Origin: Girardia tigrina
Taxonomy: Eukaryota
Length of the DNA stretch: 58,011 nt
Assembly (NCBI GenBank): GCA_001938485.1
Contig: MQRK01226581.1
Span: 1 to 58,011 of the forward strand
Direction of reading: 5' to 3'
The notes under the pieces were generated by a model. It was given only the letters and a program-made list of their open reading frames with translations, was not told where the DNA came from and did no database searches. This document shows positions 1,117 through 55,329 of this stretch, piece after piece. The position numbers and the translations under genes are program-made. Positions within the stretch are counted from its first letter, which is position 1, and every line of letters starts with the position of its first letter.

Positions 1117-2090
1117 TGTCGCTCTGACTGCAGAATGCATTAGGTTGTTCGAAAATGTAATTTTAATCAATAAAATATATAAAAAATCATAAAATCAATT
1201 AAATCAAAATTGTAGAAAGACTATTATACAACCCCCACAAATTTACAAAAATTATAAAAGCTTACAGTTTGTGTTGTGACTGTATTGATTTGATTATGAT
1301 ATTTTTCTGGATTTTTAATGAATTAAATGAAAAAGTAAAATTTTTACTGTGGTGTCAAAATTAATATTTAAGTGTCATTTATTAATATCAAAAATCCATT
1401 CGTTAATAGAAAACCTGGATTTTTATGCTGATTTTTTATTTTTGGAATCAAAATATTTTATGTGAATATTTATGAATTAATTTGTGATTATTTATGAATT
1501 AATTTGTGATTATTTATGAATTAATTTGTGATTATTTATTAATTAATTTGTGATTATTTATTAATTAATTTGTGATTATNNNNNNNNNNNNNNNNNNNNN
1601 NNNNNNNNNNNNNNNNNNNNNNNNNNNNNTGTCGCTCTGACTGCAGAATGCATTAGGTTGTTCGAAAATGTAATTTTAATCAATAAAATATATAAAAAAT
1701 CATAAAATCAATTAAATCAAAATTGTAGAAAGACTATTATACAACCCCACAAATTTACAAAAATTATAAAAGCTTACAGTTTGTGTTGTGACTGTAATGA
1801 TTTGATTATGATATTTTTCTGGATTGTTAATGAATTAAATGAAAAAGTAAAATTTTTACTGTGGTGTCAAAATTAATATTTAAGTGTCATTTATTAATAT
1901 CAAAAATCAATTCGTTTATAGAAAACCTGGATTTTTATGCTGTTTTTTTATTTTTGGAATCAAAATATTTTATGTGATTATTTATGAAATAATTTGTGAT
2001 TATTTATGAATTAATTTGTGATTATTTATTAATTAATCTGTGATTATTATTTAATTAATTTGTGATTATTTATGAATTAATTTGTGATTA
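1117..2090. repeat. ~0.5 kb near-identical tandem duplication (1117-1579 vs 1630-~2090) spanning an N gap
   Basis: TGTCGCTCTGACTGCAGAATGCATTAGG... recurs at 1117 and 1630 with scattered SNPs; each copy runs into the 22-bp satellite. May be a haplotype or assembly duplication. Confidence 0.8.
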
Positions 2091-3871
2091 TTTATGAATT
2101 AATTTGTGATTATTCATTAATTAATGTGTGATTATTTATTAATTAATTTGTGATTATTTATGAATTAATTTGTGATTATTTATGAATTAATTTGTGATTA
2201 TTAATGAATTAATTTTTGATTATTTATGAATTAATTTGTGATTATTTATGAATTAATTTNNNNNNNNNNNNNNNNNNNNNNNNNNNNNNNNNNNNNNNNN
2301 NNNNNNNNNNNNNNNNNNNNNNNNNNNNNNNNNNNNNNNNNNNNNNNNNNNNNNNNNNNNNNNNNNNNTGAATTAATTTGTGATTATTTATTAATTAATT
2401 TGTGATTATTTATTAATTAATTTGTGATTATTAATTAATTAATTTGTGATTATTTATGAATTAATTTGTGATTATTTATGAATTAATGTGTGATTATTTA
2501 TGAATTAATCTGTGATTATTATTTAATTAATTTGTGATTATTTATGAATTAATTTGTGATTATTTATGAATTAATTTGTGATTATTCATTAATTAATGTG
2601 TGATTATTTATTAATTAATTTNNNNNNNNNNNNNNNNNNNNNNNNNNNNNNNNNNNNNNNNNNNNNNNNNNAATTAATTTGTGATTATTTATGAATTAAT
2701 TTGTGATTATTTATGAATTAATTTGTGATTATTAATGAATTAATTTTTGATTATTTATGAATTAATTTGTGATTATTTATGAATTAATTTTTGATTATTT
2801 ATGAATTAATTTGTGATTATTTATTAATTAATTTGTGATTATTAATTAATTAATTTGAATATTTATTAATTAATTTGTGATTATTTATGAATTAATTTGT
2901 GATTATTTATTAATTAATTTGTGATCATTTATTAATTAATTTGTGATTATTTATGAATTAATTTGTGATTATTTATTAATTAATTTGTGATTATTTATGA
3001 ATTAATTTGTGATTATTTAGGAATTAATTTGTGATTATTTATGAATTAATTTGTGATTATTTATGAATTAATTTGTGATTATTAATTAATTAATTTGAAT
3101 ATTTATGAATTAATTTGTGATTATTTGTGAATTAATTTGTGATTATTTATGAATTAATTTGTGATTATTTATTAATTAATTTGTGATTATTAATTAATTA
3201 ATTTGAATATTTATTAATTAATTTGTGATTAGTTATGAATTAATTTGTGATTATTTATTAATTAATTTGTGATTATTTGTGAATTAATTTGTGATTATTA
3301 ATTAATTTGTGATTATTAATTAATTAATTTGTGATTATTTATGAATTAATTTGTGATTATTTATGAATTAATTTGTGATTATTTATGAATTAATTTGTGA
3401 TTATTTATGAATTNNNNNNNNNNNNNNNNNNNNNNNNNNNNNNNNNNNNNNNNNNNNNNNNNNATTTGTGATTATTTATGAATTAATTTGTGATTATTTA
3501 TGAATTAATTTGTGATTATTTATGAATTAATTTGTGATTATTTATGAATTAATTTGTGATTATTTATTAATTAATTTGTGATCATTTATTAATTAATTTG
3601 TGATTATTAATTAATTAATTTGTGATTATTTATGAATTAATTTGTGATTATTTATGAATTAATGTGTGATTATTTATGAATTAATTTGTGATTATTTATG
3701 AATTAATTTGTGATTATTTATGAATTAATTTGTGATTATTTGTGAATTAATTTGTGATTATTTATGAATTAATTTGTGATTATNNNNNNNNNNNNNNNNN
3801 NNNNNNNNNNNNNNNNNNNNNNNNNNNNNNNNNNNNNNNNNNNNNNNNNNNNATTTGTGATTATTTATGAA
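1468..3871. repeat. 22-bp AT-rich tandem satellite (consensus ATTTATGAATTAATTTGTGATT), interrupted by gaps and by the duplicated unique block at 1630-~1970
   Basis: Directly visible period of 22 (e.g. GTGATT at 3331 and 3353); variants such as TTATTAATT and TTAATTAATT; dozens of copies; several N gaps. Confidence 0.97.
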
Positions 3872-4709
3872 TGTTAGGTTATATAGAAAGGGTAGAAAAA
3901 ATCCGAAAAAACTTCATCACATACTCACAATACACTCACATGACTTCAATACACGCGTGTATAAATACATAATTTAGAAGAAATACATAATTTGTAAGAA
4001 TCATAATCATTTCTTTATGGCACTGACACGTTATAGAAATTAATAAATAATTGCAAATTAAATAATATTTATAAATTAATTAACTAAAAATATTACTTAA
4101 ATAAGCGTAAAATGATATGAAAGTCATTAAATCATATGTATGTTGCCATTCGTAAATGCCTAAGTGGCATTTCTAATCGTGAATATGTGTATGTATGCAT
4201 GGTTTTTTTTAGGGTAAGAGATTTTTTTCTATGTATAACACAACCTTTAAGTGCAGATTGCTATTTTTATATTAGGTTTACAGTTATTTTATAATTTTTA
4301 ATTGGCAATTTATTTTTAGATGGTCAATTTTTGTATAGAATTTTGAAGTCTTAACTGCAAGCAACTGTATTATAAATAATCTTACTCAAAGAATCGCGTT
4401 TCCTTCTTTAGAAAAGAATGAAGTGAAGGTAAAATTGGAAATTTAAAAATATTAAAAAAACAAAGTTTAAAAAATCATGAAAATATTTTAAGAAAAAATA
4501 TTTTTGAATAAGTTTTCTCAGGTATTTTTTATTGATTTATTCAAAATAATATTCGATCTATTTTCTGTTAATTTACAAATAATATTTAAAAATTTTATGA
4601 TAATATTTTATTTTCATTATTATAATTCATAAATATTGATTGAACGTGGTAAATGGGACATTTACATATTTCTTACAATTGGTTTCACTGCTAATGCACG
4701 AATTACCTT

Positions 4710-6300: not shown

Positions 6301-6439
6301 CAATAAGATTAAATCAAACAACACTCAGTTCATATTTACACTTCAAAAAAAGCAGTTCTCGAAAAGTAATTCGTAAAAAAACAATTTGCAGAAATCAAAT
6401 TTATATAAAAACAAGTTTGTACTACAGTTTGAATTGTTT

Positions 6440-9330
6440 TAGATGAATTCCCATATTAAAAGTGTGCTTACAGAAAAGCTTCGGAATTACATGTTGAGTT
6501 CATCCAATTGGTAACTTCTTCCATTTACCAAATGCTAAAAGATTTTTGAATTGTTCGAAACTTGCTTTTTATATTTCACTTTTCATTTACTTTCTCCGTG
6601 ACACCACACGGTATTTAGTTCACTCGTCTTGGGCCTTTCTCATCACCAATGATATCTTTTGAAGATTTAGTCCATTGATAAGACTTTGTCCATAGATTCA
6701 AAAAAATAGTAGGTTCTGAGGCGAATAGTTTGGCATTAATCTTAGTTGGATTACGTTCAATGAATATAAAAAATTTAATTATTTGATTTACTAGTATTTA
6801 TTTTTATTTATTATCAAATATATATTTATAATTTCAAATAACAAAAATATATTTTTTAATATATTTATTCAATAATTTATTATTCAACATGTTTTTAATA
6901 CATTCAAACAAATATGCAGAGTCAGCGACATCTCTTTCACCAAATCACAGTTTCAAATTTCTTCATTCACTAATGTTGCTTTCACTGATATCACGAACTC
7001 TGCCTAACGCAAACTGTTATTAGTTCAAAATTTTTTGAAGTGTACCTAGATTGAAGATTATTAATTTTCCCCGTCTATATGGAGTACTTTGGTCCTAAAA
7101 TTAATTTAAAATTGTATAAACCTTTTACTGTTTTCTTTTGTATGTGATTTTAATCATTTAATTCGGGATTAAGTGAATTAAAAATTTTTTTGTATGTGAT
7201 TTTAATTTATGTGATCTGTAGTGTTTTTATTTACTTTATTTTTTTTATCACATATTTTACAAAGAAAACCGGTGATTTATCGGATTATTATGATCTAGCT
7301 AATTTATCGAGTGAAAATATCGAAAAAGACAAAAACATAACATAAAAACGATTTCGGTTTTATTATTTTATTTTATTTCAAACGATTTATTATTCAGTAT
7401 TATTTATTATTCGATTTATCAATCAATTTGCCAAAATTTGAAAATCAATTTGATATTTTTTTCGGCGTTCAAAATTTTATCGTTTTTTTAATTGAAGCCC
7501 AATGGAATTTAAATACGGAAATTTGATTTTCTCTTCGAATTTTGTTTCGGGTAATGTATTGAATGTGAATCGAGTGTCGCTTGGTGAGGATACCGCGAAG
7601 GAAAAGACTTTATTTTGGTGAAAGAAAAATAAATATCAAATTTAATGAAAATTCATGTTGTTTGAATATTTGAAAAAAATCTTGAAAACAGAACTTGATT
7701 ATTTACCGCGCAGAGATATTTCGCCTCAATTTATATGCTGTAAATGACATTAAATAAAGTTTATGATTAATGTGGTAATTTTTATTTATTTTTATTTCTC
7801 AAAATTGTAATAGCGATATTCCTGTTAAAAGTTGTTAATTTCGTTAAATATTTTTATTTCTTAGTAAAAAATAGACATTTGAAGATCAGTTCAAATCCCT
7901 ATTTTTTTTTCAAAGATAATAAAAAATTAAGACTTATATCCAATATTCTGTCTGCATAAATAATGTGTATGTAAAATTAATTTTTTTGATTTACTAGTTT
8001 TTTTCTGTTGTGAAATATGACTGAACGAAATAGGTATTGTCGTTATTGATAGTAGAACTGGGTGTCCCACTTTTCGTGTTTTTAGATGAATTCGTCTCTC
8101 CTGATATATTCTTATGGTATATATTTTAACGAATACAAAATACATTTATTCAAATTTATCATAATACATCTAAATCGATTTGTAAACACATCGATAAAAC
8201 ACGTATTTTATTAAATGTTTTTTGCTTTTCTAAAATAATAGTATTGTGGCTCGGCATTGTTTTTTATTGTGCCACCGTGTCTCTTAATAAAGGCCTGGAC
8301 GTCATCATCGATTTGGCCACCCAGCGATATTATTGTGTTGTGTTGATAGAATATATATTCGATAGAATATTGTTGATGGAAAAATTGAGAAATTCGATCG
8401 ATGGAGAGTCAAAATTCGTTGTGCGCATATATTTCAGCGCGTGGGTCAAGAAATGTTTTAATATATCGATTGATTGAGTGATGAATCGTTAATTTTCTGT
8501 TTTTGTTCTTGATTTGTCGTTTTGTTCCTAACGATCATTCGTTCTGGTTTTTCGTCTAATTCTATTTCCAATGTTTTGAACATCTCGAAATATGTCCTTT
8601 GTTCATTGAATTTGCGTAGTCCCCAGAAATAGTAGAGACAATGCAACACACATTCTTTTCGAAGCACTTGTAATATGTCGTCGTCGTCGTCATCATTGCA
8701 CTTTTAATTACTTTTAATTCTGTCTGCATAGATAATGAGTATATACAATTAAATTTTTTGATTTACTAGTTTTAATTTTATATTTATTATCAAATATATA
8801 TAATTTCAAATAACAAAAATATTTTTTTAATACATTTATTTAATAATTTATTATTCAACATGTTTTTTAACACTTATGCATTTTTTAATTCACTTTTTTG
8901 TTTTACTGAATTGATTAAAATTACTCAAAAAAATACAAATTATGCAACAAATTCAAAATTTTTCCATAAAAATTTTCAGTTCATAAAGAAAATGAATAAA
9001 GCAAAATTTAAAGGAATCGGAAGTAGATATTGGATTACGTTCAATGAATATAAAAAAAATATTTGATTTACATTATTTATTATCAAATATACATTTATAA
9101 TTTCAAAAAAGAAAAATATTTTTTTAATACATTTATGCAATAATTTAGTATTCAACATGTTTTTAACACATATTCAAACAAATAGGCAGAGTCCGCGATA
9201 TCTCTTTCATCAAATCACAGTTTCAAATGTCTTCATTCACTAATGTTGATTTCACTGATATCACGAACTCTGCCTAACGCAAACTGATATTCGATCAAAA
9301 TTTTTTGAAGATTATTAATCTTCCCCGTCT
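6440..9330. repeat. Mosaic dispersed repeat, copy 1 (homologous to 33538-35610)
   Basis: 6440-7110 matches 33538-34213 and 7918-9030 matches 34216-35484 at high identity; 9030-9330 re-copies 6746-7077. Contains decayed minus-strand ORFs of unknown function. Confidence 0.9.
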
Positions 9331-9646
9331 ATAAAAACATAAAATTTTTTATCGTCCTCCTCCAATTGTCCATGAGCAGGTCAGTGCACTTTTTGAAAAT
9401 ATCCATCCACTCGTGGTCAAAAATTGATTCAAATTTAATCCCAAATCCGAAATGAATCCCAAATTGATTGTATCGCTCGAACGCATTGTTGTTCAGGTTC
9501 TCGAGTGCGTCGATGCCCTGGGCAGCCCTAAACTCCGCCATGCACTGCTCCCGCTTGCCGAAGTTGTTGGCGCACTGGAACCACTCTCGCACGGCGTCCT
9601 GCGGAAGCATGGTTATCTTGTTGTCGTCACTTTCACAAACTTTCAA
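9329..9646 (-). pseudogene. GC-richer ORF of unknown function (105 aa), probably the 5' part of the decayed gene carried by the mosaic repeat
   Basis: Protein-like composition (MKVCESDD...EWFQCANN...DHEWMDIF...NWRRTIK). The frame continues past the stop as TGKINNLQKILIEYQFALGRVRDISE, into a block repeated three times. Confidence 0.4.
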
Positions 9647-9854
9647 TTTTAATGGCTTCTTAAAATAGCAAAGAAAAATTTCGCACAGGACAATATTTTT
9701 ATTTAATTGAAATTTAAAATCATAAGGGTGACTTAGTCACATTTAAATTCAAAAATTTCGCGCCAACCAAAATTCATTAATAATTCAATAATTTATTCCA
9801 ACAAAACTCGATTGATTAAAATTCACACATCATCACTTTTTCAAAATTTCGCCC

Positions 9855-12800
9855 TGTTACGGTCCAATATTGAGTAACCTAGACTTAGGCAATTCCATGC
9901 AGTCATTAACAATAAAATAATAAAGAAATAAGAGGAAAACATTAGTGTGTAATACATATTTAAATCACCAAAATTGTTCTCGAAGTTGTTCTCGATTTCC
10001 CGAGGACAGTGGAGCATTGTGGATGCCGCGTAGAGGCTAAAATAAAAAATAGAATAAAAACTCACCCGTTGAGAAAAATCAAACAACCGCCCCTTCCCCG
10101 AGAGAGTTTCGTTAGGCGCCTCAGCAATAGCAACTCGTCAGAGGATTGCGTGGCCCTGGAAAAAGTTATTCACCCTAAAAGCATCAAAGTTAATTCAAAA
10201 TGAACCCAAAAAATTAATAAAGTTACTTACAGGATTATCTAGTGGAGCTGAGAGGTCACCCAACCCCCTCCGTGTAGCCCCTCACAAGATGAGTCCCTGA
10301 GCAGAACTCGTGGGACGTCGACAGATACCTGGAAAAAGCTATTCACCCTGAAAAAGAAAAAAATAATCAAAATTCGACCAAAAAACAACAAAGTCCCTCA
10401 CCGAGATATCCAATGGAGCTACGGGGTCAACCGACCCTCCCACGAAAGATCTTCGCGCGGTCAATCCGTGGGCGAAACCCGCGAAGCCGTAGGACCTCCC
10501 TGAGAAAATTTATAGCCCCTGAAAGATCAAATAAATAATTAAGAAAAATAGAAAATTAATTAATTTTACCATGAGTCAACCCAGAATCCGAGAATAATCG
10601 TCAGCTGATGATTCCGTGTGAATCAACCGTAAATCAGCAGCAGGCATGCCTGAGAAATATGGAAGTGTGTAAAGGCACACGAGACTGGATCCTATAATAA
10701 AATAAAATTTTTATAAAATAATAAATAAAATAAAATAATAAAATAAAATTAAAATACCGACAAGCCCGACAAACCAGCATTGCAGAATTTTCAGACGACT
10801 GGTTGGCGGAACCTGGTTGGCCAAGAGAAGACAACAGGACAACCTAGATGAAATATAAAACAGAAATCATTTTACGACGAAGTCGCACAAAAATTTAAAA
10901 ACGAAACCGAATCCGCGCTTGCACGTTTTTCGACGATACAATTTACACGCAAATTCCGAGAAGAAATAACCGATCCGACGTCCAGTATACGGCCGAGCGA
11001 TAACCAATCCATACACTGCGAACGAGAATCCGTAGACGAATTACGAGAAGGCGACAACCGAAGCCGAGAGCCTAATTCCAGTAGAGCGCTTCAATCGACT
11101 GATGCACCGACGAGCGAAGATTACCGCAGACTCATTCACGACTGATCGACTAGCGATTTGCCCGTATCCTCCGGATCCCGTTGGACTTGTTTCTAATTGT
11201 AAATTTTGTTATTTCGCTGATGAATATTTATTACCAACCAATTTATTAAATTAAATAAACGTGTTTTACGATAATGGTTTTTCACTTTTAACGTAATTAA
11301 CTTGTGAAACCAAGTTCCGGCCGTCTAGCGCTTCGATCTAGGCGGGTTCCCTTCCCGTCGTCGCCGCCGTCCCATGAGATCCCGCGGAATTGTGTATGAG
11401 TCCAGCGATCCGTTAATGTCGACCTTGAATTTAAATCCGAGGGTCGCTTCGAAGATTTTAACTAATAAATTTAAACAAGCAAAGTTTCGAGGACGAAATT
11501 CTGTCGATTAACAATTTTTTTTATAATTGCGTTTTTAATAAGTTTTTTTTCTTCCTTAGATTTTCTTTTGCAGTTAAATATAATTCACTAAAGTTCTAAC
11601 GTTAACACCGCGATTTTCAACTTATTCCGTCAGTTTTATAATAAATTTATTAATCTTATAATTTTAATTTCGTAATGAATCAATTTTTCACAATTTACTT
11701 GTCAATTCATCAATTTACTTGTTAATTTTTACGAACCATTTTTATGGATCAAGCTTACTTATCAGTTTACTATTAATTTTACTTATCGATTTTACAAATT
11801 TTAATGAATTTATCAATCCTATAATTTAGTGAATGAATTTTATGAATGAATTTTTTTTACAATTTTATCTGTACGAATTTATCGATTTTTAATGAATTTT
11901 ATCATGAATCTATTTTACCATTTTGAGCTTAGGAATTTATCAATTTTACTTTATAAAGAATTTAATGATTACGACGAAATTACCAGTTTTGCCGAAAATT
12001 ACCATTTTCGAAAATTGCCGATACTTTTGTAACGAATCCTGAAAAGTTTACGAAATTATCAATTTTATAGAGTAGGAAATGGAGATTAGAGAGTTGTAAT
12101 GGATTGAACTGTTAATAAACGACTAGTGGGTTGAGAAGTGTAAATTTGAATGAACCAGTAACTGCAAGTAATTAGGTCCGTTGTTGATAAGTCCATATTA
12201 CCTTAAGATAAATCTGCCGTTGACATTAAATGATGACCCTTTGGCGTAATTAAGTAATCTTGAGGTGAATCTGTATGAATTGAACAAAGTACGATTGAGA
12301 GAGATGTGGTCGATGAAAACGACAATAAAGTCTAATAGTCGATACGAATTACTGTTGAGACGAATAACAAATATACACTACATAATGATATATACTACTT
12401 TCAGGAGGGATATACTGCATAAATATGTTTACGACAGTGCCACAAGTTTATTATCATGCACATCACAGTACCACAAGTCACATCACATTGTCGCAAGTTC
12501 GACGCATAACATCAGCGTCGAAGTTATAGACTGATACAACAGTGCAACAAGTTTTACGATACACATTTACCATAGAGGTGATAAAATTGTTGAGGAACGT
12601 AATATATAAATCATCCCCGAGCGACACTAATCTAGGTGGGTCCATAGCCTATCCAGTCTTTAACCGAACCCGAAGGCTCCTTGAGCTTGGCACTGGTAGG
12701 CAGATGTCAGGCAAGATAGGAGGCGTCCGACTCTACTATACAACCGCAGCGTTTAAAATGGGAAACAGTTTAACGTTTAAAACCGAAATAAAATTATAAT

Positions 12801-15800: not shown

Positions 15801-18054
15801 TGCTTGATTTCACTGTGTGGAATGTGCCGTGCTTGTGTATGTTATCCTGAAGTACTTTGTGGTGAATGTGCAGTGATTATTGGATGTGTGTTCTGCGCAA
15901 CAACTACATTTAGAAAAACAATCGTATCCATTTACGCGAATAGGATGTCGCTATCCCACTTCTGACAACTATATGGTGCTAGCCCCGTGATCCGGCTGTA
16001 GGGGCCAGCACATGTTTTTCGTTCGCGAAGCATCCGCCGGTTCAATGTCGACTGACCCTCGATCGGATCCGACTGGCACCGATTGGCGTCCGACGGATAA
16101 TGACCATCGGTCATAGTCGTCGCGGCTTCCAGAAACACGGACTCATATTCGTGGCCGACAGGAAACTTCAAGGCAGTTTGCGATCGACCAAGCTCGTAGA
16201 CTTTCAACCCTAAAGCGCGACTGGGGCGGCTGCATGTGTGTGCCGGACACCACCGAAATATGTGATGAGGTGGCGTTGGTAGACCGATCGATTGAGGCCG
16301 CTGTCATACAGTGTAGTTCGAATTATAACCCATCAAAATTTATAACCCTAAATTATAACTAAACAAAAATAGAATCGAATCGTCACATTTATTTCAGTAA
16401 ATTACAAAATTGTTCCACCTTACTCAAAATTTTTCAAACAAAATGTAATAAAATAATAAATTTTTATTTATAATTGTTTTTTTTTAATTTTCGAGCACCA
16501 CAAGCGTTTAGTAACTATAAATTAATAAATTTTAATACCAGGTCTACTTTCATCATTTAATTCTAATACTGACATTGATAATAACTGTGGTAAAATATTG
16601 GGTTAAATTTTATTTATAGTTACTAATAGATAATAGTTATTAAATTAATAATAAAGATTTTGTAAAATAAGGAAAATATAAACTTGAAAAGGAGTATTAA
16701 ACAATTAGGAGTACTAATCTCAAAAGTCTTTAAAGAGCCGTTCCTCTAAGGTGTTGTCCGTAAAAAAAACTGAATATGTTTTTCAGAAACTGTAATTTTT
16801 GTTTCATGCATTTAAAATTATTCTATTACGATTTTTTTATTATTTGACCCTTAATGATTATATACACTGACTTCCATAATTGTATACTTTTTCGATTTTT
16901 TACTAAATCGTGAATTACTTAGGGAGTATAAATCGGTTCATAACTTTTAGATGTTTGCCTGAAAGATAATTTTAAGCTGTACAAGATGATATGTACATAA
17001 AAAGTTTAACTATTAATAAAAAATTCTTCTGTTTGAAATCTGGCGTTTCTTAATATACTCAGAACAAAAAATAAATAAATAATTACAGTAATATATAAAT
17101 ATTGTTACATTCAATACCTAAAAAAATTAGTCTCCAAAGATAATTGAGATATATAATGTTAAGTGCATTAAAATTTTTTACTAATTTATAATTTAATTTA
17201 TTTTTTATATTCTTGTTCCATTCGATCTCTAAGCCGCCGAAAGATCGAACGGTGCTACCAGAGTCGCAATGATGCATTTTTGCTCGTGCATTTCATAATC
17301 GTAATCGTACTATACCCATTTTAGTGTTCATTATAATTTTTTTTCAGTCCAAAACAGAAAGCAAAGTCGTTTTTATATTTAATTTTTTCAAATTCGTCAA
17401 AAAATCGCTTTCACAGAATTGGAAATTTAAAAAATTAAGACTCGTTCACAATGTAATTCCATGAAATACTCAAAAAAATTCGTCTCAAATTTTTGTTGAA
17501 CAAATATTCGTTATTTTGTTTTCAATAAAATCGTTTTAACAGTCAAATTAATTCGTCTATGTGGTGACTCTCATTTGATCAAAATATTCGTTTACAACTT
17601 TGAATCGTAACTCGATAAACATTCAATCAAGATTAGCAAATCGTTTTAATTGTAACTCAACAAAATTTTACGCAGCAAAAGAAACAAATCGATGTCGATC
17701 GGTAATTTTATAATCGTTTTCAAATTAGAGACTCGAAAAAATTAAATTCAAAATTGTCTTTTGAATAAATTTGTCAAAATAGCAAATAATCAGCTTTTGA
17801 ATGTAGTCGATTGAATGGCTTTAGAATTTTTTTGATGTTTCTTACTGTTCAAATGTTTATTGATTGTTGATTGACGTTCGTTACACAATTAATACTACAG
17901 TAGCAAAGCTCACAGTAAAACCATTCGTCCCCTTTTTCGCTTCGCTTGATGCATTTGTTATTCAAATACTCTTCTTTAAACCTGCAGTTTCGCTTAGACA
18001 ATCTAAAAAGTAACATTTTAAATTTATAAATTGGTAAAATTGAGTATAAAGTTT

Positions 18055-18364
18055 AAACAAGAGCAATACAAAGACTACTACAATAAAACTGCAAAAGATC
18101 ACACCTTTAAAATTGGAGATATCGTACGAATGTTTACTCCTGAATCAAAAAAAAGGCAGAAGTCCCAAACTGAACAGGCTATATAAAGGACCATATGAAG
18201 TAATAAAAGCTTCGGGAAAAAATTTACAGCTAGTGAATATAAAGAATAAAAATAAAGATCTAATCATTGTTCATGTCAATAGATGTAAGTTAGCAGAAAA
18301 CAATAAATACGATAATAAAAGATATAACCTTCGATCAAACATGAAATATCCAATAGAAACTAAT
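18055..18364 (+). mobile_element. Ty3/Gypsy integrase C-terminal (GPY/F) remnant, frameshifted and interrupted by element C
   Basis: QEQYKDYYNK...FKIGDIV / SPKLNRLYKGPYEVIK...VHVNRCK...RYNLRS. The frame resumes at 21026-21079 (IDEETLSPYLIGYQALF*) once element C and one TSD are removed. Confidence 0.85.
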
Positions 18365-21021
18365 TGTTACGACCACGATTTGAAGGAAACCCTCCTTCAC
18401 AACCCCCATCCTGTACGCCCGAGATCATTGGAGAAAGTTTTGAGGACAGTCTAACTCGACTGTCTTCGGTTAAGTTTAAATTGATCCCGAGCTTCTTGGG
18501 ACGAAGGGTCGTTCGGGGGGTTCCCTGATTCCGACTGGGGGTTCCTTGCGGTCCTCCGGGGCTCCTTTGAGGCCTTCTAAAAAAACAAAAAATTAGTGAT
18601 TTTAATTAATTAATTAATTAAAATCTTACTTGAAGAATNNNNNNNNNATAGTGGGTGGCCGACCTACAATGAGAAAGTAAAGATAAGATAAGATAAAAAA
18701 GATAAAAGAATTCTTACCCATAAACATGCCAGGAAGGTGCATCCTGGCGTCCTCGCTTTCTGACAGGTATTCGCTTTAAAAAACTATGTGAAAGTGCACT
18801 CTGGCGCCTTCTTGTGTATTAGGTGCAAATCAAAGGTATAAATACCAATGATTTCCAGCACGCAACTTTACCTTTTTTATTATTCTCACAAGACGATAAA
18901 AATTTATTCGTAAGAATTATTTCTTTATTTTATTATTTTATTCATTGTATTAATGATTTTATTATTTTTATTACTGTTTGATTATGTCATTATTTTATTG
19001 TAGAAATGATTATTGTCATCATAATTTTTATTTAAAAATAAATTTTATCATTTTACTATTTTATCTTTTCCTAACAAAAAGGGTAATGGAATTAAATATT
19101 TAATTAGTTAACTATCAAAAAAAAAATTTTTTTTTAATGTTTTAAAATTATTCATTTTCCTTTAGAAGTACTGATTGACTAAATTTTATTTCAAATATTT
19201 GTATTTGTTTCTACGAAAGTTATTCTCTAAATTTTTAAATAAGCGTAGAAATTATCACAAATTTATAAATTCTAATAAAATATTAATACTATTCACTCTT
19301 TCATTTTGCAAAAATAATAATCAAATTTTTGCTTTTTATTATTAAATAATTTACTTAAAAAAAATTAATTATACGAATTGGAATTTACTCGTTATACAAT
19401 TTACTTTCATTTATTTTTTTGTAAAAATTTAAATAACTATATTTAAGAATCACTGATATCCTCTGGAACATCGAGTTTCGAAAACCATTGTATTTTACAT
19501 TCTAGTAAAAATAATTAGTAAAATAAATTTATACAACATTAAACTATTGGGAGAAATTTCGTAAAAGAAATAATTGGTGGTAGTTTCCTATTAAGTCTCC
19601 TATGTCAAAAGTTACCGCAACACAAAAACTTGGTCCTTCGGAATTATAAAAAGGGGTCCGTTAAAATCCACAATCTTTTAAAAGTTGTTCTCTTTGCATT
19701 TATAGAGTGTAGTACATTAAATATAATACATTGATCGCTTGAAAAGAGTACTATTTGGGGAGCTATTTATTAAATCGTAATAGTGTTCCCTATTTAATGG
19801 AAACTTTTCATTTAATACTGGAATTCGAGTGTCACATTTTGGAATGCAATTTTCTTTCACTTCTAACGCCCCCCATATTGTTAATTTCCAAAAATTACAG
19901 TTTAAAATTAAACTGGACGAAAATAAATATCTTTTTTTTTATAAAAGAAAAGGAAAAGCAATTCACTAAGGAGAAAAAGGTTTTTTTTAAATAATGAATG
20001 TTAATTACTCGCGTTTGAGTCAGACAATTGTTGAAAGAAATCAGAAATTAAAAAATGTTCTATCACTTTAGAGCCTTTTATTCAATGAACTTTGTCCTGT
20101 CAATCAATAACAATATCCTTTAAAGTATGGATCATACAATAATCAGTCGAAGCGATAGTATAATCACCAACAAATTGAACTGGTATTGATTTCATAAGTA
20201 TAAACTGAGCTAATTTATTTAAAGTTTTACTGCCACAATCGGACTGTTGATTTATAATATATAATGAATTAATTTAAAATTATTTAAGGAGTGTATACGT
20301 TGAGTAGTTGTGATAAACGAGACGTACTTTTATCTTCGATGTCTAACTCTATAACATAGTTAATTATTCTCTTCAAGTTAAATTTTGTCTATTTCGTTCC
20401 AAAATACATTTACAAAAGTTTNNNNNNNNNNNNNNNNNNNNNNNNNNNNNNNNNNNNNNNNNNNNNNNNNNNNNNNNNNNNNNNNNNNNNNNNNNNNNNN
20501 NNNNNNNNNNNNNNNNNNNNNNNNNNNNNNNNNNNNNNNNNNNNNNNNNNNNNNNNNNNNNNNNNNNNNNNNNNNNNNNNNNNNNNNNNNNNNNNNNNNN
20601 NNNNNNNNNNNNNNNNNNNNNNNNNNNNNNNNNNNNNNNNNNNNNNNNNNNNNNNNGGGTCTAGAGAGACGGTGCAGGCGGCCCATAGCATGCACAGGGG
20701 CACGTGGGCTGACCGTCACTTGTGGCTCTAGGGTGCCTTTGTCTGATGAAGAAAAATAAATGAATTTCAAATAAGCATAAATAAAGTTCGCATCTACCCC
20801 TCCAGAAACTCAGCTACCAGTCGGGTCACCCTCGGTACTGGTCAAGAACCCGAAGGCGCTCCAATGTGCACACAACTTGTTGATGTGGACAAAGGAGGCG
20901 CGTTGGCTCCCCAAGCTTAAATTGAAATGGATTGAGTTGGTAACAGAGTTGCCGTTTAACTCTAAAAGTGGATGGGGGCTCTGAGCTTTCAAAAATGTTA
21001 TCTATAAAGAGGAGCACAACA
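18365..21021. mobile_element. Element C: ~2.7-kb solo-LTR-like element with 4-bp TSD, relative of element A
   Basis: TGTTACGACC...GGAGCACAACA flanked by TAAT (18361-18364, 21022-21025). Right end shares GGGGGCTC-TGAGCTTT.AAAAATGTT, AACCCGAAGGC and AGGAGGCG with the right end of A. Minus-strand GT-AG introns at 18577-18629, 18664-18717 and 20743-20797. Confidence 0.8.
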
Positions 21022-23962: not shown

Positions 23963-24161
23963 TCGGATAAGGGGTAGATAAGCAAAAGTTAGTATGCAAC
24001 GTAAAAAACTAATCCTAATTCGGAACTCTTTGTATGTAGTTTACAGCACAAAAACAATGTGTATATTATGTTTCCAAATATTATCATATTTGATTTTCTA
24101 TTTCCTCTTAGGAAGTTTTTAACGTTGCATACTAACTTTTGCTTATGTACCCCTTATCCGA
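23963..24161. mobile_element. 199-bp MITE with ~50-bp terminal inverted repeats
   Basis: TCGGATAAGGGGTAGATAAGCAAAAGTTAGTATGCAACGT...ACGTTGCATACTAACTTTTGCTTATGTACCCCTTATCCGA; no clear TSD. Confidence 0.8.
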
Positions 24162-32010: not shown

Positions 32011-33537
32011 AATTTTTTTTCAATTTATTCACGAATAATAATAACGTAAAATTCTTTAAGAAAATTTATCATAAAAATTAAGTTAAATAATTAAACTATT
32101 TTTATGTATATAAATATTTGTACTATATATGGTTGGTAATTATAGTGACAAGTGAGTGAGAATTTGAATAGAAAATTCGGGAAGAGTCGATCTGTGTATG
32201 AATTTAGTGGAATGTTGAGAGTTCGGTTCGATGGGCGATCTGTTAGACGCGACATGATGATGTAATGATTATTCGTAGTAGATTCTTATCGAAAAAAATC
32301 CATATTTCTCACAACTTTAAATCACATCTTTTCCGCGAATAATTTCATCATAATATCACCGAGATACAATAAACCTGTTCAAATTTTTTTCATCAAATTC
32401 ATCCTTTGCACTTCTAATTTAAAAACTACTCAATTTCAAACAATAGCCAAATCTTTCAAAACTCTAAATGCAAATGTTTTAAGCTCACTTACAAATTTTA
32501 TGTAACAATACTTGATTCCATAAAACTAATTATCAGATCAATCAAATGATTTAATCAATTTTAGACAAATAATTCATTTTTTTTACAAAATTTATTTTTT
32601 TTACTTCTTCCAATTTTTCATATAAAAGTTAATTACTTTTTAATTACTTATTTAATTAACTCATTATTTAATTAACTTATTCATTTACTTTTTTAACTAT
32701 TTACACGAATCACACAAGAAAAAAGGCTTAACATTAATAGGTTAGTAAATAAATAACTAATTTATCAGCAAACTTAGTCGAGCAGTAAAAAATTATATAA
32801 TATTAATAAAAAATGATTAAGATTAGTAAAAAATTATATGTACCTTTTCTTATATGTACCTACCGCGTTTTCTTTTTTCGCCAAGAACTTCTTTAGTTAT
32901 TGCTGGTCATTTGTGTAAAAATCGGTTTAACCCAGTAAGAAATGTTCAGAGAACTGTACAGTGTTAATTGCACGAGTTTTTTACTATCAAATATTTCACA
33001 GACGCAAAAAATCACTTAATGTAGGAAAAATATATTGTTAACAACAATCCAACATAAATTGATAAACAAAATTAAATAAAAACCTCATGATATAATCAGA
33101 CGCGAAATGATCAAAAAATGAATAATAATTTTTATTGTTAATATAATGGATGCCAATAGAATTACAATTGTGAATAATACTTCAAAGAGAAAAAGTCACG
33201 TGAATCGAAAAATCTTCAGATGTCTTGGCGAAAATTTGGGATTTGTCAATTGTCAGTAAATAATCACGCCGTAATTATAACCGCAATTTTCAATTAATAT
33301 CAATATTGATTTTTTTGTATTTAAATTACCCTTGGTAATTTGATAATAAAGTATTTATAATTTAATTTAGTGAAATTATTGGGGGAAATATAATACACAG
33401 TTTCGTTTCTTTTTTTTCATCGCTGACTTGATGACCTTCACTTTTATTTGACTTGACTAATTAGTCTTTTAAATGTCGTTAAAAAATAAAAAAATCGGAA
33501 ATGTGAGAAAGTCACACTACTAGTTTTCATTGTTTTG

Positions 33538-36925: not shown

Positions 36926-37438
36926 ATGATCGAAAGTGATCATAACGTCGAAATGAGGACGAAAGAAATTCCGAGAGAAATAAATGTCGAAGTTGTTAAA
37001 GAAAAAACGAGCACAGTTAAATGCGAATATTTCGAAAATCATATAGTTTTGTTTCTCCAACATTTCGGTTCTGCATATGCTCCGATTCGAATTTTGAAAG
37101 AGAATGTTATCAATAACGGATTTCTCGATAGAAATGTCCTTTCGATTTCTTTTATTTATGAAGACGAAATAGATAGCGGTTTATTAAATTTTAATAAATA
37201 TCAATTACGGATTCATATTTATCAACTAAACGAAACTGATGAAATTTACGAGAAGGAATTTGATCATGATGGTGAAAGCGTAATCGCAGTCGATAACTGG
37301 ATATTACCGTTCCCGGCTTTTGAAAATCTATTGAACTCTCTTGTCTATTCCAACAACATCAAAACAATTTTAAATACAATATGGGCCCAGCAATTCATCC
37401 ACAAAATTTCCCTGCGCAACCCTGCTACCTCCATCTGA
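36926..37438 (+). pseudogene. TRIP13: Truncated TRIP13/PCH2 (pachytene checkpoint AAA+ ATPase) N-terminal fragment
   Basis: INVEV...ST...FLDRNVLSIS...IHIYQLNE...ESVIAVDNWILPFPAFENLLNSLVY...K matches the TRIP13 N-domain (VHVEV..., FLTRNVQSVS, LHIFQLNE, AANHWVLPAAEFHGLWDSLVY). Similarity stops at ~37365, before the Walker A motif. Confidence 0.85.
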
Positions 37439-48138: not shown

Positions 48139-48168
<30 letters not shown>

Positions 48169-48169
<1 letters not shown>

Positions 48170-51159: not shown

Positions 51160-51194
51160 TATATATACATATTGAAAATTTGTTTGAATGGAGT

Positions 51195-52109: not shown

Positions 52110-54910
52110 AAAAATTCGATAGCGATGAATTTCGATTTGATTGTGCAGAGAAATTTGCCGTATGACGTTCACGAATATCGACCGTCGACTGGCAATCAGA
52201 AACAAGAGGGATCATCCCTATGGGCCCAGATGCTCCCTTCAGTCGGACATTTCGAAAACATTTCGTAGGAATTTTCTCTTGAATCACCATAAAACATATT
52301 TTCTTTGAATATATTCTTTTTCGATTTGGTGAAAGGAACTAGATGTGTTTATGGTCATTGTAAAATTCTTCAAAACTAGTTCTGTACACTGCTTCACATG
52401 TTGGAGTTATAAAATATTCTTGTGATGAAAAATTGTATTTGTAGTATTGGGATAAATTTGAATTCTAAAAAAATTATTTATTTACGGAGCTGAAAAAAAC
52501 TCACCATTTTCTTAACAGAATTTTACTATCGGCCTGTACTAAATGAAATCATCAATCCGCTTCCTAGCCGTTCATTTTCATTACTAAAATATCATCAGTA
52601 TATTTACCATGGACTTATCAACAACAGGATTATAAGTTTATTCACATTTACTGGTTTATTTAAATCTGAACTTCTTCAATTTTATTTGTTAATTATTTAT
52701 TTATCGAACAATCATTTATCATAAATTATTTATCATTAATTATCTTTAATTATTTAGTCAAATCTACCTATTATGAAACTCATAAAACTTCCATTTGCAG
52801 CTCGTAAATCATAAAACCCATTACAAATTTCTAATTCTAATAATCATCCCTTATGAAATTGATAATTTCCTTATAAAATCATTTCATTATAAGATTAATA
52901 AATTCATTATAAAATTAACTTCTTAAAAGAAAATGATAAAATTTCAAATATTAATCGGCTGAGATTTCTCATTAAGATCCGCTTAGATTCAGGTTAAACT
53001 AAATCGAAACCGAACTCTCAATCCAAATTAACTCAATTAAGTCATAAAATTATGTAATTTCTAAAAATTTTAAATTCGCCGATTAAACATTGGTTAACTT
53101 CAAGAGTTACTAATTATAAGATTTCTATTCTATAATTCATACTGATAAAAGGTAATAAAGAAAATTTTATTTTATAATTCATATTGATAAAAATCAATTT
53201 AAAAATTCTATTTTGTATAAAACTGTTAATCAATAAAATTTAGTTCTCAGAAAATTTTATTTGTTTAAATTTGCTAATCTGGATTCCCAACGTGACACTC
53301 GGATTTGAATTGAAAGTCATTTTCGGCGGATCGCCGAAGCTCATATGAAACTCCGTGAAATCTCATGGGACGGCGGCGACGACTGGCAAGAAATCCGCCT
53401 AGACCGGGGCGCTAGACGACTGGGACTCGAATTTACAGGTTATTGATATTTAAAAGGGAGAATCATCATTATAGAATACATTTATTTAGTTAAATAAATT
53501 AAGCAATAAATAATAAATAACCAAAAAACAGAAAAATATTTACAGATAGGAGTTCAATGGGATCCGGAGAATGTCTCGATAAACGGTGTCTGTCGATTTA
53601 TTCGTCTTCTTCACTCGTCGACACGTCGGTTAGCCGAAATGTGTTTCTCGGTCGTTCTCTCGGTGCTGTAAATTCGTCAGTGGATTTTCCGCTCGGTGAG
53701 GCCATCGGTCTTCACTGATAATTTATCGTTCCTTTCGTTTGCGGTGTGCTCGTGGATCAACTGTTCTCACTCGAAGTTTCTTTGGTAACGTGATATCTCG
53801 ACGTAATGCGTAAACGTAAGTTCGGTTTTTATTTCAAAATGTGCGACTTAATTGACAAATGATTCTCATTTTATACCGTAGATGGGTTGTCCTATTGTCC
53901 CTTCTTGGCCAATTGCATGCTGCCAGCAAGAAGTCTGCAAAATTCTACGATGCTGGTTGGTCGGGCTTGTCCGTGTGTCTCCAAAAATTTTTGGTAATTT
54001 ATGATTTACTATAGAATTTTGTAATTGTCTTTTGACACATACGTTATTATTTTCAGCACGCACGCGCGGATTCACCGGTGATTCATACGGAATCATCACC
54101 TGATACCTATTTTTGGAGTCGCGGCTGACTCATGGTAATTTTAATTAATTCTCTATATTTCTTAATTAATTATTTGATCTTTCAGGGGTTATATCTTAGC
54201 TCGGGAAGGTGCTAGGGCCTTGTGGTTTTCGCCCCGAAATTGCACTTGCGATGTTCTTTCATGGGAGGGTCGGTTGACCCCATAGCTCTATTGGATACCC
54301 CGGTGAGGAACTTTGTTGTTTTCTGTCTGTTTTGTAATTAATTATTACTCTTTCAGGGTCAATAACTTCTTTCGGGGATCTGTTATGGTCTGACGAGTTC
54401 CACTCAGGGACTCGTCTTGTGAGGGACTATACGGAGAGGGTCGGTTGACCCCCCAACTCTACTGGGTATTCCGGTAAGAGGCTCCATCATTTTTCTATCC
54501 AATTATTAATTAATTTTTTATTCTTTCAGGGTTTATACTTTTGCTCCAGGTGATGTGACCAGCTGATGGTTTATCGTCACGAATTCACTTATCGATGTTC
54601 TATCTCGAGGGGAATATTCGATCGATTTCTTCTATCAGGTGCGTTTTTATTTAATGTCGTCTATTTGTTTTAGGTTATGTTTGTAGTTTCACTGCGACGT
54701 CCTCACTGCTCCGTCAGACTACGAAGGTGTCGAAAATGGTCTCGGGATTTATCCGGTTAAGACTTTTATCTGGTTATGATCTATCTGGTACCTTTTGAAT
54801 ATATGTATTATTTTTTTCTCTCTTTCTTTTTCCTCTGTTTGCTGAGTGCTGTGTTTTGCGCGTTTATGTCAATATGCTGGAAGATGTAAATAGGTTTTTC
54901 GACCGCAACA
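52110..54910. mobile_element. Element B: inverted, diverged copy of element A (left boundary uncertain)
   Basis: 53290-54750 aligns to the reverse complement of ~9960-11455; ends GACCGCAACA (A: GGACCGTAACA); weaker matches (CTATGG.CCCA) near 52220. Confidence 0.8.
53280..54800 (+). ncRNA. Predicted multi-exon non-coding transcript in element B
   Basis: GT-AG introns at 53439-53545, 53816-53881, 53994-54056, 54135-54185, 54303-54356, 54474-54529 and 54639-54686; exons 54186-54302 (117 nt), 54357-54473 (117 nt) and 54530-54638 (109 nt). Confidence 0.65.
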
Positions 54911-55329
54911 AATTATATATACTCCTTTATGCAAATCCATATTCTCTTGTATGCAAATCTATATTCCAATCACAAAAAAATTGATAACCTAATTTTATGA
55001 TAAATAAACAATTTACATCAATAACAAAAATTACAAGAAAAGTAACAATAAAAATAATATAAATACCAAAACATTAAATTAAAAATAATATTTAACATAA
55101 CTTTTAACAAGTAATTTTTAATTATATAAATTCTTTCGACAAGCTGCTTTTTCAAGTCAGTGCTTTGTATTGCTAAAGAAATTATGACATAAAGTCGTGT
55201 AATTATTTTCCGAGGCGAGAACCATATCCAAGCATTCCATAATTTGGTTGACTATTTTAGCAGTAATATATCTCCCCTTTATCATTGTAAAATAATTCTA
55301 AATAGGATTCGATTCAGTAAAATCTTTTT

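What the first reader, a model, noticed from the sequence alone, without database searches (positions are those of the whole stretch)
9950..11450. Retroelement-borne spliced non-coding RNA with exactly conserved exon/intron architecture
Seen: element A (minus strand) and element B (53280-54800, plus strand) each carry a chain of GC-rich exons separated by short AT-rich GT-AG introns. Lengths match exactly across the repeated block: intron 51 / exon 117 / intron 54 / exon 117 / intron 56 / exon 109 in both copies. Yet the first 117-nt exon differs at 28 of 117 positions by hand count, with no indels. It has stops in all three frames in both copies, and its substitutions are not third-position biased, so protein coding does not explain the conservation. 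Established: an intron in the sense strand of an LTR is purged by reverse transcription unless the unspliced RNA is the replicon. Inference: the family makes a length-constrained spliced ncRNA, either antisense or as a heavily spliced leader. It might regulate export or packaging, feed or decoy small-RNA pathways, or yield circular RNAs. I do not recognise it as a described system.
Basis: partly seen in the sequence, partly recalled or inferred. Interest (0 to 1): 0.9.

Follow-up and report, generated by a model that had tools for sequence, protein, structure and literature searches.

The report
Duplicated spliced non-coding gene, not retroelement
Two old, inverted copies of a 1.6-kb unit look like paralogous multi-exon non-coding RNA genes built from a repeated exon-plus-intron module, and nothing ties them to a retroelement, so this is a decent lncRNA candidate rather than a new kind of system.

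Summary
Copy A (minus strand, about 9982-11551) and copy B (plus strand, about 53186-54743) align. Both carry intron 51 / exon 117 / intron 54 / exon 117 / intron 56 / exon 109, all GT-AG. The first 117-nt exon differs at 28 positions without indels.

The exons are non-coding:
- Every frame of every block exon has stops in both copies, and some stops are shared.
- No frame runs from one 117-nt exon into the next.
- There is no synonymous excess.
- The joined exons give no ORF longer than shuffled sequence does.

Substitution rates vary tenfold along the block, which has no gap over 590 columns, so the pair is under selection.

The four units are diverged tandem copies of one ancestral exon-plus-intron module of about 170 nt.

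"Retroelement-borne" is not supported. There are no terminal repeats and no adjoining gag/pol domains. Homology fades gradually at both ends, and the window holds only these two copies.

I found no sign of conserved RNA structure, mirtron hairpins or any Rfam family. The claim of length conserved without sequence rests on intron 56 plus exon 109, and there it is only marginal (P about 0.03-0.06).

Transcription and splicing are untested. No further copies could be retrieved, and the organism is unidentified.

The best reading is a pair of lncRNA genes with repeated exon modules, analogous to Firre.

The parts
11519..11525 (-). Copy A: TATA-like motif at the position homologous to that of copy B (possible promoter; weak)
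   Evidence: One search finds it at homologous places in A and B, and the alignment agrees. The motif occurs at chance frequency in this AT-rich window (76 found, 77 expected), so this is inference only.
11302..11495 (-). Copy A exon 1 (5' end inferred, not mapped)
   Evidence: 24-25 of 30 identical in its core. The donor was placed. It sits one alignment column away from the donor of B, so this donor is less certain.
11325..11375 (-). Copy A short ORF of 16 codons in exon 1, same length and position as in B
   Evidence: By reading the two sequences, 7 nucleotide differences fall in 5 of the 17 codons and only one of those codons is synonymous, so it is not evidently translated. The first six codons are identical at the DNA level.
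11193..11301 (-). Copy A intron 1 (109 nt, GT-AG, weak donor)
   Evidence: AT-rich.
10758..11192 (-). Copy A exon 2 (435 nt), poorly conserved, with many indels against B
   Evidence: No ORF of 62 aa or more.
10650..10757 (-). Copy A intron 2 (108 nt; alternative acceptor at 10692)
   Evidence: A low-complexity AT tract lies inside it.
10570..10649 (-). Copy A exon 3 (80 nt), first unit of the tandem module array
   Evidence: Stops shared with B in all three frames.
10519..10569 (-). Copy A intron I51, the best conserved piece (46/51 identical, K2P 0.11)
   Evidence: It is not a hairpin.
10402..10518 (-). Copy A exon E117a
   Evidence: 28 differences, stops in all frames. Fold z-score -1.4.
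10348..10401 (-). Copy A intron I54
10231..10347 (-). Copy A exon E117b, tandem duplicate of E117a
   Evidence: (73.7% over 114 nt between the two units).
10175..10230 (-). Copy A intron I56
   Evidence: K2P 0.65.
9792..10174 (-). Copy A last exon: the 109-nt unit (10066-10174), a relic donor followed by only 29 nt, and a tail to the first AATAAA (9792-9797)
   Evidence: K2P is 1.04 over the 109 nt. The 3' end is inferred.
53216..53222 (+). Copy B: TATA-like motif homologous to that of A (weak)
53246..53438 (+). Copy B exon 1 (5' end inferred)
53365..53415 (+). Copy B short ORF of 16 codons
53439..53545 (+). Copy B intron 1 (107 nt)
53546..53972 (+). Copy B exon 2 (427 nt)
53973..54056 (+). 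Copy B intron 2 (84 nt; alternative donor at 53994 and alternative acceptor at 54014)
54057..54134 (+). Copy B exon 3 (78 nt)
54135..54185 (+). Copy B intron I51
54186..54302 (+). Copy B exon E117a
54303..54356 (+). Copy B intron I54
54357..54473 (+). Copy B exon E117b
   Evidence: Unit spacing of 172 and 172 nt.
54474..54529 (+). Copy B intron I56
54530..55008 (+). Copy B last exon: the 109-nt unit (54530-54638), a relic donor followed by 35 nt, and a tail to the first AATAAA (55003-55008)
   Evidence: The 3' end is inferred.

Best explanation
A and B are two old paralogues, made by DNA-level duplication, of a gene for a spliced long non-coding RNA.

**Proposed product (inferred).** Each copy would be transcribed from the strand on which all AT-rich segments read GT...AG. 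Five short introns would be removed, and the RNA would end at a downstream AATAAA. That gives an RNA of roughly 1.2-1.3 kb with no reading frame.

**Architecture (shown).** The 3' half is an array of four diverged tandem copies of one exon-plus-intron module of about 170 nt. The module is a GC-rich exon of about 117 nt plus an AT-rich intron of about 54 nt.

**What selection has kept (shown).** It has kept the splice signals, the exon-intron GC contrast, the last 45 nt or so of each module exon, the whole of intron I51, and the register of the block. It has let the rest drift.

**Most likely mode of action (inferred).** The repeated exon modules would be reiterated binding sites for a protein or an RNA, as in other lncRNAs with exonic local repeats. 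Alternatively, efficient splicing of the locus is itself the selected property.

**Shown:** architecture, non-coding status, uneven constraint, tandem origin.
**Inferred:** transcription, splicing, transcript ends, function.
For: - Exact shared architecture with canonical GT-AG and TTTCAG/TTTTAG ends.
- Branch-point-like motifs 10-25 nt upstream of each acceptor, read directly from the sequence.
- Strong T-over-A excess on the inferred sense strand in both copies, although they lie on opposite genomic strands.
- Non-coding now and in the ancestor.
- Rate heterogeneity along the block: chi-square p = 5e-8, K2P from 0.11 to 1.04.
- Flanking DNA is no longer alignable.
- A gap-free run of 590 columns where 7-10 indels are expected (P about 8e-4 to 4e-5).
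- Splice signals are better kept than the rest of the block, and all real GT/AG are kept.
- Exon GC is held at about 50-57% in a 28.8% GC genome, with balanced strong-to-weak and weak-to-strong changes in exon 3 and the two 117-nt exons. The 109-nt unit is the exception.
- The modules are tandem duplicates.
- Local repeats that make up exons are a known feature of lncRNA loci (PMC4820808).
Against: - There is no expression or junction evidence of any kind.
- Only two copies could be studied, so every conservation test has low power.
- No thermodynamic or covariation signal for RNA structure. Z-scores run from -2.4 to +1.4. Covariation controls were reached by 94/500 and 121/500 shuffles.
- No Rfam family matches even at E <= 1.
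- The neighbourhood is rich in repeats and carries only N-terminal pieces of two host genes. Non-functional duplicated fragments are therefore common here.
- Patchy gene conversion could mimic part of the uneven conservation.
- The intron 1 donor is weak and offset by one column between the copies.
- The GC of the 109-nt unit of B has dropped to 41%.
Confidence: 0.5

Rival explanations
1. These are non-functional relics. A piece of some multi-exon gene (untranslated exons, or a long-dead pseudogene) was duplicated within a repeat-rich region, and both copies are decaying. The apparent constraint comes from uneven mutation rates or from patches of gene conversion between the inverted copies.
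For: - The window carries other gene fragments. The PSMD5-like gene matches only residues 1-295 of 516 of its nearest relative and has one change of frame.
- The TRIP13-like gene has its N-terminal domain only, with no Walker A motif anywhere in the window.
- There are satellites and transposon remnants.
- No RNA structure signal was found.
- The most 3' unit is close to saturation.
Against: - Neutral decay does not predict a tenfold range of K2P across adjacent pieces of 50-117 nt.
- It does not predict a 590-column gap-free run next to flanks with 18 gap openings in about 1040 columns.
- It does not predict retention of all splice dinucleotides.
- It does not predict GC held near 55% in a 28.8% GC genome.
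- The best-kept stretch still has about 8% differences, so it is not a fresh conversion tract.
- Composition alone does not explain the rates. I56 at 23% GC has K2P 0.65, while I51 at 14% GC has 0.11.
Confidence: 0.22
2. The unit belongs to a mobile element. It could be a solo LTR or leader of a retroelement. It could be the pseudo-LTR of a Penelope-like element. It could be the internal part of a non-autonomous DNA transposon that captured a spliced transcription unit. On this reading the uneven conservation reflects selection on master copies.
For: - Two diverged copies lie within 58 kb of a transposon-rich region.
- Both copies share a start of alignable sequence close to a TG.
- Penelope-like elements are known to keep spliceosomal introns (PMC4209133, PMC2377424).
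- A sub-threshold integrase C-terminal remnant lies 6.5 kb from A (E about 0.05).
Against: - No terminal inverted or direct repeats and no convincing target-site duplication round either copy.
- Similarity fades gradually at both ends and continues upstream of the TG.
- No reverse transcriptase, integrase, gag, protease or transposase domain adjoins either copy.
- No hammerhead ribozyme or any other Rfam family at E <= 1.
- No further copy or fragment in the window, even with the most sensitive nucleotide search.
- The copies are in opposite orientation, so they cannot be the two LTRs of one element.
Confidence: 0.15
3. The conserved pieces act as DNA, for example as a cis-regulatory module or a phased chromatin element with a period of about 171 bp. 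On this reading the GT...AG boundaries are inherited from the ancestral repeat unit without being used for splicing.
For: - The best-kept piece is an AT-rich segment (I51), not an exon.
- The units recur every 171-173 bp.
- The three downstream GT-AG pairs are copies of one ancestral pair, so they are not independent evidence.
Against: - Upstream introns 1 and 2 are not part of the repeat, yet they also have conserved GT-AG ends on the same strand.
- Every intron carries a pyrimidine tract, an acceptor and a branch-like motif at the right distance.
- Strand asymmetry follows the inferred sense strand in both copies.
- Real GT/AG are all kept, while about half of the decoys are lost.
Confidence: 0.08
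4. The exons encode a repetitive protein (39-residue modules) read with an unusual code, or both copies are recently broken coding genes.
For: - 117 is a multiple of three.
- Tandem symmetric exons are typical of modular proteins.
Against: - At least one stop in every frame of every block exon in both copies.
- Stops are shared between the copies in all frames of exon 3.
- No frame is free of shared stops in both 117-nt exons.
- No synonymous excess in any of 24 exon-frames on either strand.
- The longest stop-free stretch of the joined exons equals the shuffled mean.
- Host ORFs in the window read normally with the standard code.
Confidence: 0.03

Closest known systems
Firre and other lncRNA loci with exonic local repeats (PMC4820808)
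   Same: - A spliced non-coding transcript in which a locally repeated unit makes up successive exons. The RRD repeat makes 7 of 13 human and 11 of 23 mouse Firre exons.
- The sequence evolves fast while the repeat organisation persists.
- The repeats are thought to act as reiterated binding modules.
   Different: - No sequence relation.
- An unrelated host lineage: an AT-rich invertebrate-like genome.
- Introns here are minimal (51-56 nt) and belong to the repeated unit.
- There are two paralogous loci.
- Nothing is known here about expression, localisation or partners.
Ya family of aphid lncRNA genes (PMC7293609)
   Same: An invertebrate family of small spliced non-coding genes. It has a conserved exon structure and a short conserved ORF that is not needed for function. 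Members often sit as pairs on opposite strands.
   Different: - Ya genes have three exons and give transcripts of 357-403 nt.
- They are 85-99% alike and lie less than 1 kb apart in tandem clusters of many members.
- Here there are at least six exons, about 1.2-1.3 kb spliced, 72% identity, two copies 42 kb apart, and internal module repeats.
- No Ya sequence was on hand for comparison, and the organism is unidentified.
Intron-bearing retroelements (Penelope-like elements; LTR elements with spliced leaders)
   Same: Repeated DNA with retained spliceosomal introns (PMC4209133, PMC2377424).
   Different: - No reverse transcriptase or endonuclease gene, no pseudo-LTR arrangement, no hammerhead motif, no defined termini.
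- Five or more introns, against the single intron described for Penelope.
Host genes of intronic small RNAs (snoRNA host genes, mirtron clusters)
   Same: A non-coding spliced transcript in which an intron is better conserved than the exons.
   Different: - The introns are 51-56 nt and 14-30% GC.
- They do not fold better than shuffled sequence.
- They match no snoRNA or miRNA family.

Membership tests
LTR retrotransposon (LTR or leader) | Two LTRs in direct orientation, or a solo LTR with sharp TG...CA ends and a target-site duplication | tested here: not met
   The copies are inverted and 42 kb apart. No terminal repeats or duplication were found. Similarity fades gradually and continues upstream of the TG.
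LTR retrotransposon (LTR or leader) | Adjoining gag/pol coding sequence (protease, reverse transcriptase, RNase H, integrase) | tested here: not met
   Pfam scans of 30 ORF translations across the window gave no such domain at or near threshold. The only trace is a sub-threshold integrase C-terminal hit 6.5 kb from A.
LTR retrotransposon (LTR or leader) | Dispersed multi-copy family in the genome | not testable with these tools
   The source genome is not in any searchable collection. Only two copies are in the window. Metagenome scans gave nothing real.
Penelope-like element | Reverse transcriptase plus GIY-YIG ORF, and hammerhead ribozyme motifs in the terminal repeats | tested here: not met
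   No such ORF. No Rfam match at E <= 1 on either copy.
Long non-coding RNA gene | No protein-coding capacity | tested here: met
Long non-coding RNA gene | Canonical, conserved splice signals on one strand | tested here: met
   Only two sequences, so power is modest.
Long non-coding RNA gene | Evidence of transcription and splicing | not testable with these tools
   No RNA data can be reached. Exact look-ups of window ORFs in public assemblies found nothing.
Structured RNA family (Rfam) or conserved secondary structure | Match to a covariance model, or folding and covariation above controls | tested here: not met
   Searches gave no match. Searches stayed within controls.
Mirtron or snoRNA host gene | Introns that form pre-miRNA hairpins or contain snoRNAs | tested here: not met
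   Intron folding energies run from 0 to -5 kcal/mol with z-scores from -0.6 to +1.3. No Rfam match.
Aphid Ya lncRNA family | Three exons, 357-403 nt transcript, 38-codon ORF, tight tandem clusters (PMC7293609) | tested here: not met
   The architecture differs. Sequence comparison was not possible.
Protein-coding gene or recent pseudogene | A continuous frame across exons, with third-position or synonymous bias | tested here: not met
Satellite or tandem repeat array | Head-to-tail units detectable as an array | tested here: inconclusive
   Tandem Repeats Finder sees no period near 171. The four units do align, and spacing is 172-173 nt. This is an old, short array of four units, not a satellite.

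The most novel reading that the evidence does not exclude
The pair belongs to a lineage-specific class of lncRNA genes in which selection acts chiefly on the splicing architecture of tandem exon-plus-intron modules. That means splice signals, GC contrast, and the exact lengths of exons and minimal introns, with little selection on exon sequence. The product or the act that matters would then be the pattern of splicing itself. Examples are loading of junction complexes at fixed spacing, or back-splicing of the two 117-nt exons, whose flanking introns share a self-complementary AT motif.
Probability: 0.12. Interest if true: 0.65.

Novelty: new member of a known kind. Interest (0 to 1): 0.35.

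Why it matters
If transcription is confirmed, this would be a clean invertebrate example of a lncRNA built by tandem duplication of an exon-plus-intron module. It has an internal control, two ancient paralogues, that shows which parts selection keeps: the splice signals, one whole intron, and the 3' part of each module exon. That makes the question "what is conserved in a fast-evolving lncRNA" directly testable in this lineage.

It does not bear on retroelement biology.

Tried and rejected
- **More copies by DNA pattern.** An exact 24-mer of exon 1 gave 0 hits in metagenome contigs. A 17-mer shared by three module exons gave 65 hits, the number expected by chance, and none extended beyond about 25 nt. 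Those loci were not used further.
- **More copies through ORFs overlapping the unit.** Nothing was found.
- **Organism identity.** The PSMD5-like ORF has a single relative at 45% identity, from a Logan run, with no name and no other kin. The run number is in no paper. The organism stays unidentified. It is an AT-rich animal genome with CpG observed/expected of 1.27.
- **Mirtron, snoRNA-host and structured-RNA readings** were rejected.
- **A downstream coding exon shared by both copies** (a spliced-leader reading). The downstream ORFs are unrelated.
- **A coding ancestor** was rejected.
- **The short ORF in exon 1.** It is conserved in length but not in a coding manner.
- **Database searches with the joined exons** were left out, because a joined string has no reference. 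Searches were made exon by exon or on genomic spans by reference. Inside scripts the predicted exons were joined as they stand only to count ORF lengths and folding energies. Nothing joined was printed or saved.
Full report
**What is there**

The window is AT-rich animal DNA: 28.8% GC, with CpG observed/expected of 1.27. The two largest clusters of GC-rich islands in it are the two loci of the finding.

Copy A, read on the minus strand, and copy B, on the plus strand, align over about 1.6 kb. The spans are A 9982-11551 and B 53186-54743, at about 72% identity, with nhmmer E = 1e-160. Nothing else in the window resembles them, even with all filters off.

**The observation**

- Introns are 51, 54 and 56 nt, and exons are 117, 117 and 109 nt, in both copies.
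- Every intron starts with GT and ends with TTTCAG or TTTTAG.
- Exons are 41-57% GC and introns 14-30%.
- The first 117-nt exon has 28 differences, spread 11/10/7 over the three codon positions. It has at least one stop in each frame in both copies.
- The two loci stay in one register, without a single gap, for 590 alignment columns.
- Identity in that register is 49-90% per piece. When the register is shifted it is 25-40%, so even the poorly conserved 109-nt unit is homologous base for base.

Upstream of the block lie the following:
- an exon 1, whose 5' end is not mapped;
- an intron of 109 nt in A and 107 nt in B;
- a 435/427-nt exon 2 that has many indels between the copies;
- an intron 2 of about 108/84 nt, with alternative sites;
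- an exon 3 of 80/78 nt.

The piece after the 109-nt unit that looks like a further intron is only 29/35 nt long. I take it for an unused relic, so the 109-nt unit is the start of the last exon. The first AATAAA lies at 9797-9792 in A and 55003-55008 in B.

A TATA-like motif sits at homologous places (11519-11525 and 53216-53222). That motif occurs at chance frequency in this window, so the promoter is inference only.

Exon 1 carries a 16-codon ORF of the same length and place in both copies. By direct reading nucleotide differences fall in 5 of its 17 codons, and only one of those codons is synonymous.

**The modules are tandem duplicates**

Four units align with one another: exon 3 plus I51, E117a plus I54, E117b plus I56, and the 109-nt unit plus its relic. 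In B they recur every 172 nt. Tandem Repeats Finder does not see them, because they are too diverged.

The chain is therefore an old four-unit array of one ancestral exon-plus-intron module of about 170 nt, and the array was duplicated as a whole. Three of the GT-AG pairs are thus copies of one pair, not independent occurrences.

**Not coding, now or in the ancestor**

- Every frame of every block exon has stops in both copies.
- Stops at identical positions in A and B exist in all three frames of exon 3.
- No frame is free of shared stops in both 117-nt exons, although 117 keeps the frame.
- None of 24 exon-frames on either strand shows more synonymous change than permuted columns. Two reached p = 0.02, which is about what chance gives.
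- With the predicted exons joined as they stand inside a script, the longest stop-free stretch is 98-100 codons. The shuffled mean is 92-95.

I did not search any database with a joined string, because it has no reference. Searches were by reference on genomic spans or single ORFs.

**Constraint is real but uneven**

K2P distance by piece:

| Piece | K2P |
|---|---|
| I51 | 0.11 |
| Exon 3, both 117-nt exons, I54 | 0.28-0.30 |
| I56 | 0.65 |
| 109-nt unit | 1.04 |

- Heterogeneity is significant (p = 5e-8).
- Flanking DNA is not alignable at all.
- The flanks of the block within the unit have 18 gap openings in about 1040 columns. The block should therefore hold about 10 indels, or about 7 if scaled by divergence. 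P(none) is 4e-5 to 8e-4.
- In the block, splice-signal positions are 84% identical against 68% for the rest (p = 0.004). All six real GT/AG pairs are kept, against about 47% of other GT or AG.
- Exon GC has stayed near 50-57% in both copies despite this divergence. Strong-to-weak and weak-to-strong changes are balanced in exon 3 and the two 117-nt exons.
- The sense strand has a strong T-over-A excess in both copies, although they lie on opposite genomic strands.

Together this points to a unit that has been kept by selection on the strand that reads GT-AG.

**What is overstated**

The idea that length is held while sequence is free rests on I56 plus the 109-nt unit. There only about 3 indels are expected, and P(none) is 0.03-0.06. 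Elsewhere the block is simply conserved.

**No RNA structure signal**

- Introns do not fold (0 to -5 kcal/mol, z from -0.6 to +1.3), so they are not mirtrons.
- Exons have z-scores from -1.5 to +1.4.
- Joined exons have z = -0.7 in A and -2.4 in B. The unspliced block has +0.6 and -2.2.
- Of 139 pairs in the best fold of A, 36 are broken in B.
- A small hairpin shared by the modules and a consensus fold of exon 1 do not exceed their controls: 94/500 and 121/500 shuffles.
- Rfam gives nothing at the curated thresholds for the whole window, and nothing at E <= 1 on either locus.

**Not retroelement-borne**

- The copies are inverted and 42 kb apart.
- There are no terminal inverted or direct repeats and no convincing target-site duplication.
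- Similarity fades gradually at both ends.
- ORFs around both copies have no retroelement or transposase domain.
- The ORF next to A has no homologue.
- The only retroelement trace in the window is a sub-threshold integrase C-terminal hit at 18113-18454, 6.5 kb away.
- Penelope-like elements keep introns and carry hammerhead ribozymes (PMC4209133), and no ribozyme is found here.

A mobile-element origin cannot be excluded without the whole genome. I give it 0.15.

**Context**

The neighbourhood is repeat-rich.
- A 22-nt satellite lies at about 1.1-4.1 kb.
- A 92-95% repeat pair is at 6421-9333 and 33516-35484.
- There is a mariner transposase remnant.
- There are several foldback pairs.
- A PSMD5-like gene and a TRIP13-like gene are each represented by their N-terminal part only.

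This raises the prior for non-functional duplicated fragments, which I give 0.22. That reading does not explain the uneven rates, the gap-free block, or the retained GC and splice sites.

**Comparison with known systems**

- The closest analogue in how it is built is Firre, where a local repeat makes up 7 of 13 (human) or 11 of 23 (mouse) exons and acts as a reiterated protein-binding and localisation module. Local repeats are enriched in lncRNA loci generally (PMC4820808).
- The aphid Ya family is an invertebrate family of small spliced lncRNA genes with a dispensable short ORF. It has three exons, 357-403 nt transcripts and tight clusters of near-identical members (PMC7293609), so this is not a Ya gene by architecture.
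- No membership in any named family is claimed.

**Limits**

- There is no RNA evidence.
- Only two copies could be studied.
- The organism is unidentified. The nearest PSMD5 relative is 45% identical, from an unnamed Logan run.
- Both metagenome scans found nothing real.
- Exact look-ups of window ORFs in public assemblies found nothing.

I also wrote dot-patterns of identity between the two copies.

**Verdict**

- A spliced non-coding RNA with conserved architecture is the best reading (0.5) but is unproven.
- The retroelement link is not supported.
- The length-without-sequence claim is marginal.
- Interest is moderate to low: a good lncRNA candidate of a known kind.

Noticed in passing
window 1117-4100: A satellite array with a 22-nt unit and more than 70 copies. 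Higher-order blocks of about 512 nt are 95-97% alike. Several N runs interrupt it.
   Followed up: no
window 6421-9333 and 33516-35484: A pair of AT-rich repeats in direct orientation, 92-95% identical, with many small indels and internal sub-repeats (6746-7079 against 9030-9333). Their ORFs match no protein family. Copy 1 ends about 500 nt from copy A of the finding, but copy B has no such neighbour.
   Followed up: partly
window 51310-52178 (+): A PSMD5-like (proteasome non-ATPase subunit 5) gene piece. It matches residues 1-295 of 516 of its only detectable relative (45% identity) and has one change of frame. No trace of the C-terminal half is in the window. It lies about 1 kb upstream of copy B on the same strand.
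   Followed up: partly
window 36926-37438 (+): A TRIP13 / pachytene checkpoint 2 N-terminal domain (E = 1e-8 to human TRIP13 structures). No AAA+ Walker A motif is anywhere in the window. This is either a gene fragment or a first exon followed by an intron longer than 20 kb.
   Followed up: partly
window 47990-48718 (-): A mariner-type transposase remnant. Only the C-terminal part of the DDE domain is matched. It abuts a masked N run and a (TA)n tract.
   Followed up: no
window 18031-18454 (+): Two overlapping ORFs in different frames. The longer gives sub-threshold hits (E about 0.05) to integrase C-terminal SH3-like domains of Ty3/gypsy-type elements. It is a decayed retroelement fragment with no recognisable partner domains nearby.
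   Followed up: partly
window 40661-40813 and 41858-42009: Inverted repeats of about 150 nt, 87% complementary and about 1.05 kb apart, like the ends of a small DNA transposon. A GC-rich 140-codon ORF with no family match follows at 42301-42723 (-).
   Followed up: no
window 50842-50903 / 51111-51172, and 23963-24010 / 24114-24161: Two near-perfect foldback pairs (97% and 96% complementary, with 207 and 103 nt between the arms), like miniature inverted-repeat elements. The first lies just upstream of the PSMD5-like ORF.
   Followed up: no
window 10210-10227 / 10550-10567 (A) and 54162-54178 / 54497-54513 (B): Introns I51 and I56, which bracket the two 117-nt exons, share a 17-18 nt complementary AT stretch in both copies (83-88%). 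The stretch comes from a self-complementary AT motif present in every module intron. It could favour back-splicing, or it could be trivial.
   Followed up: no
whole window: CpG observed/expected is 1.27 at 28.8% GC. So there is no CpG depletion despite the extreme AT richness, and host ORFs reach 1.5-1.8.
   Followed up: no
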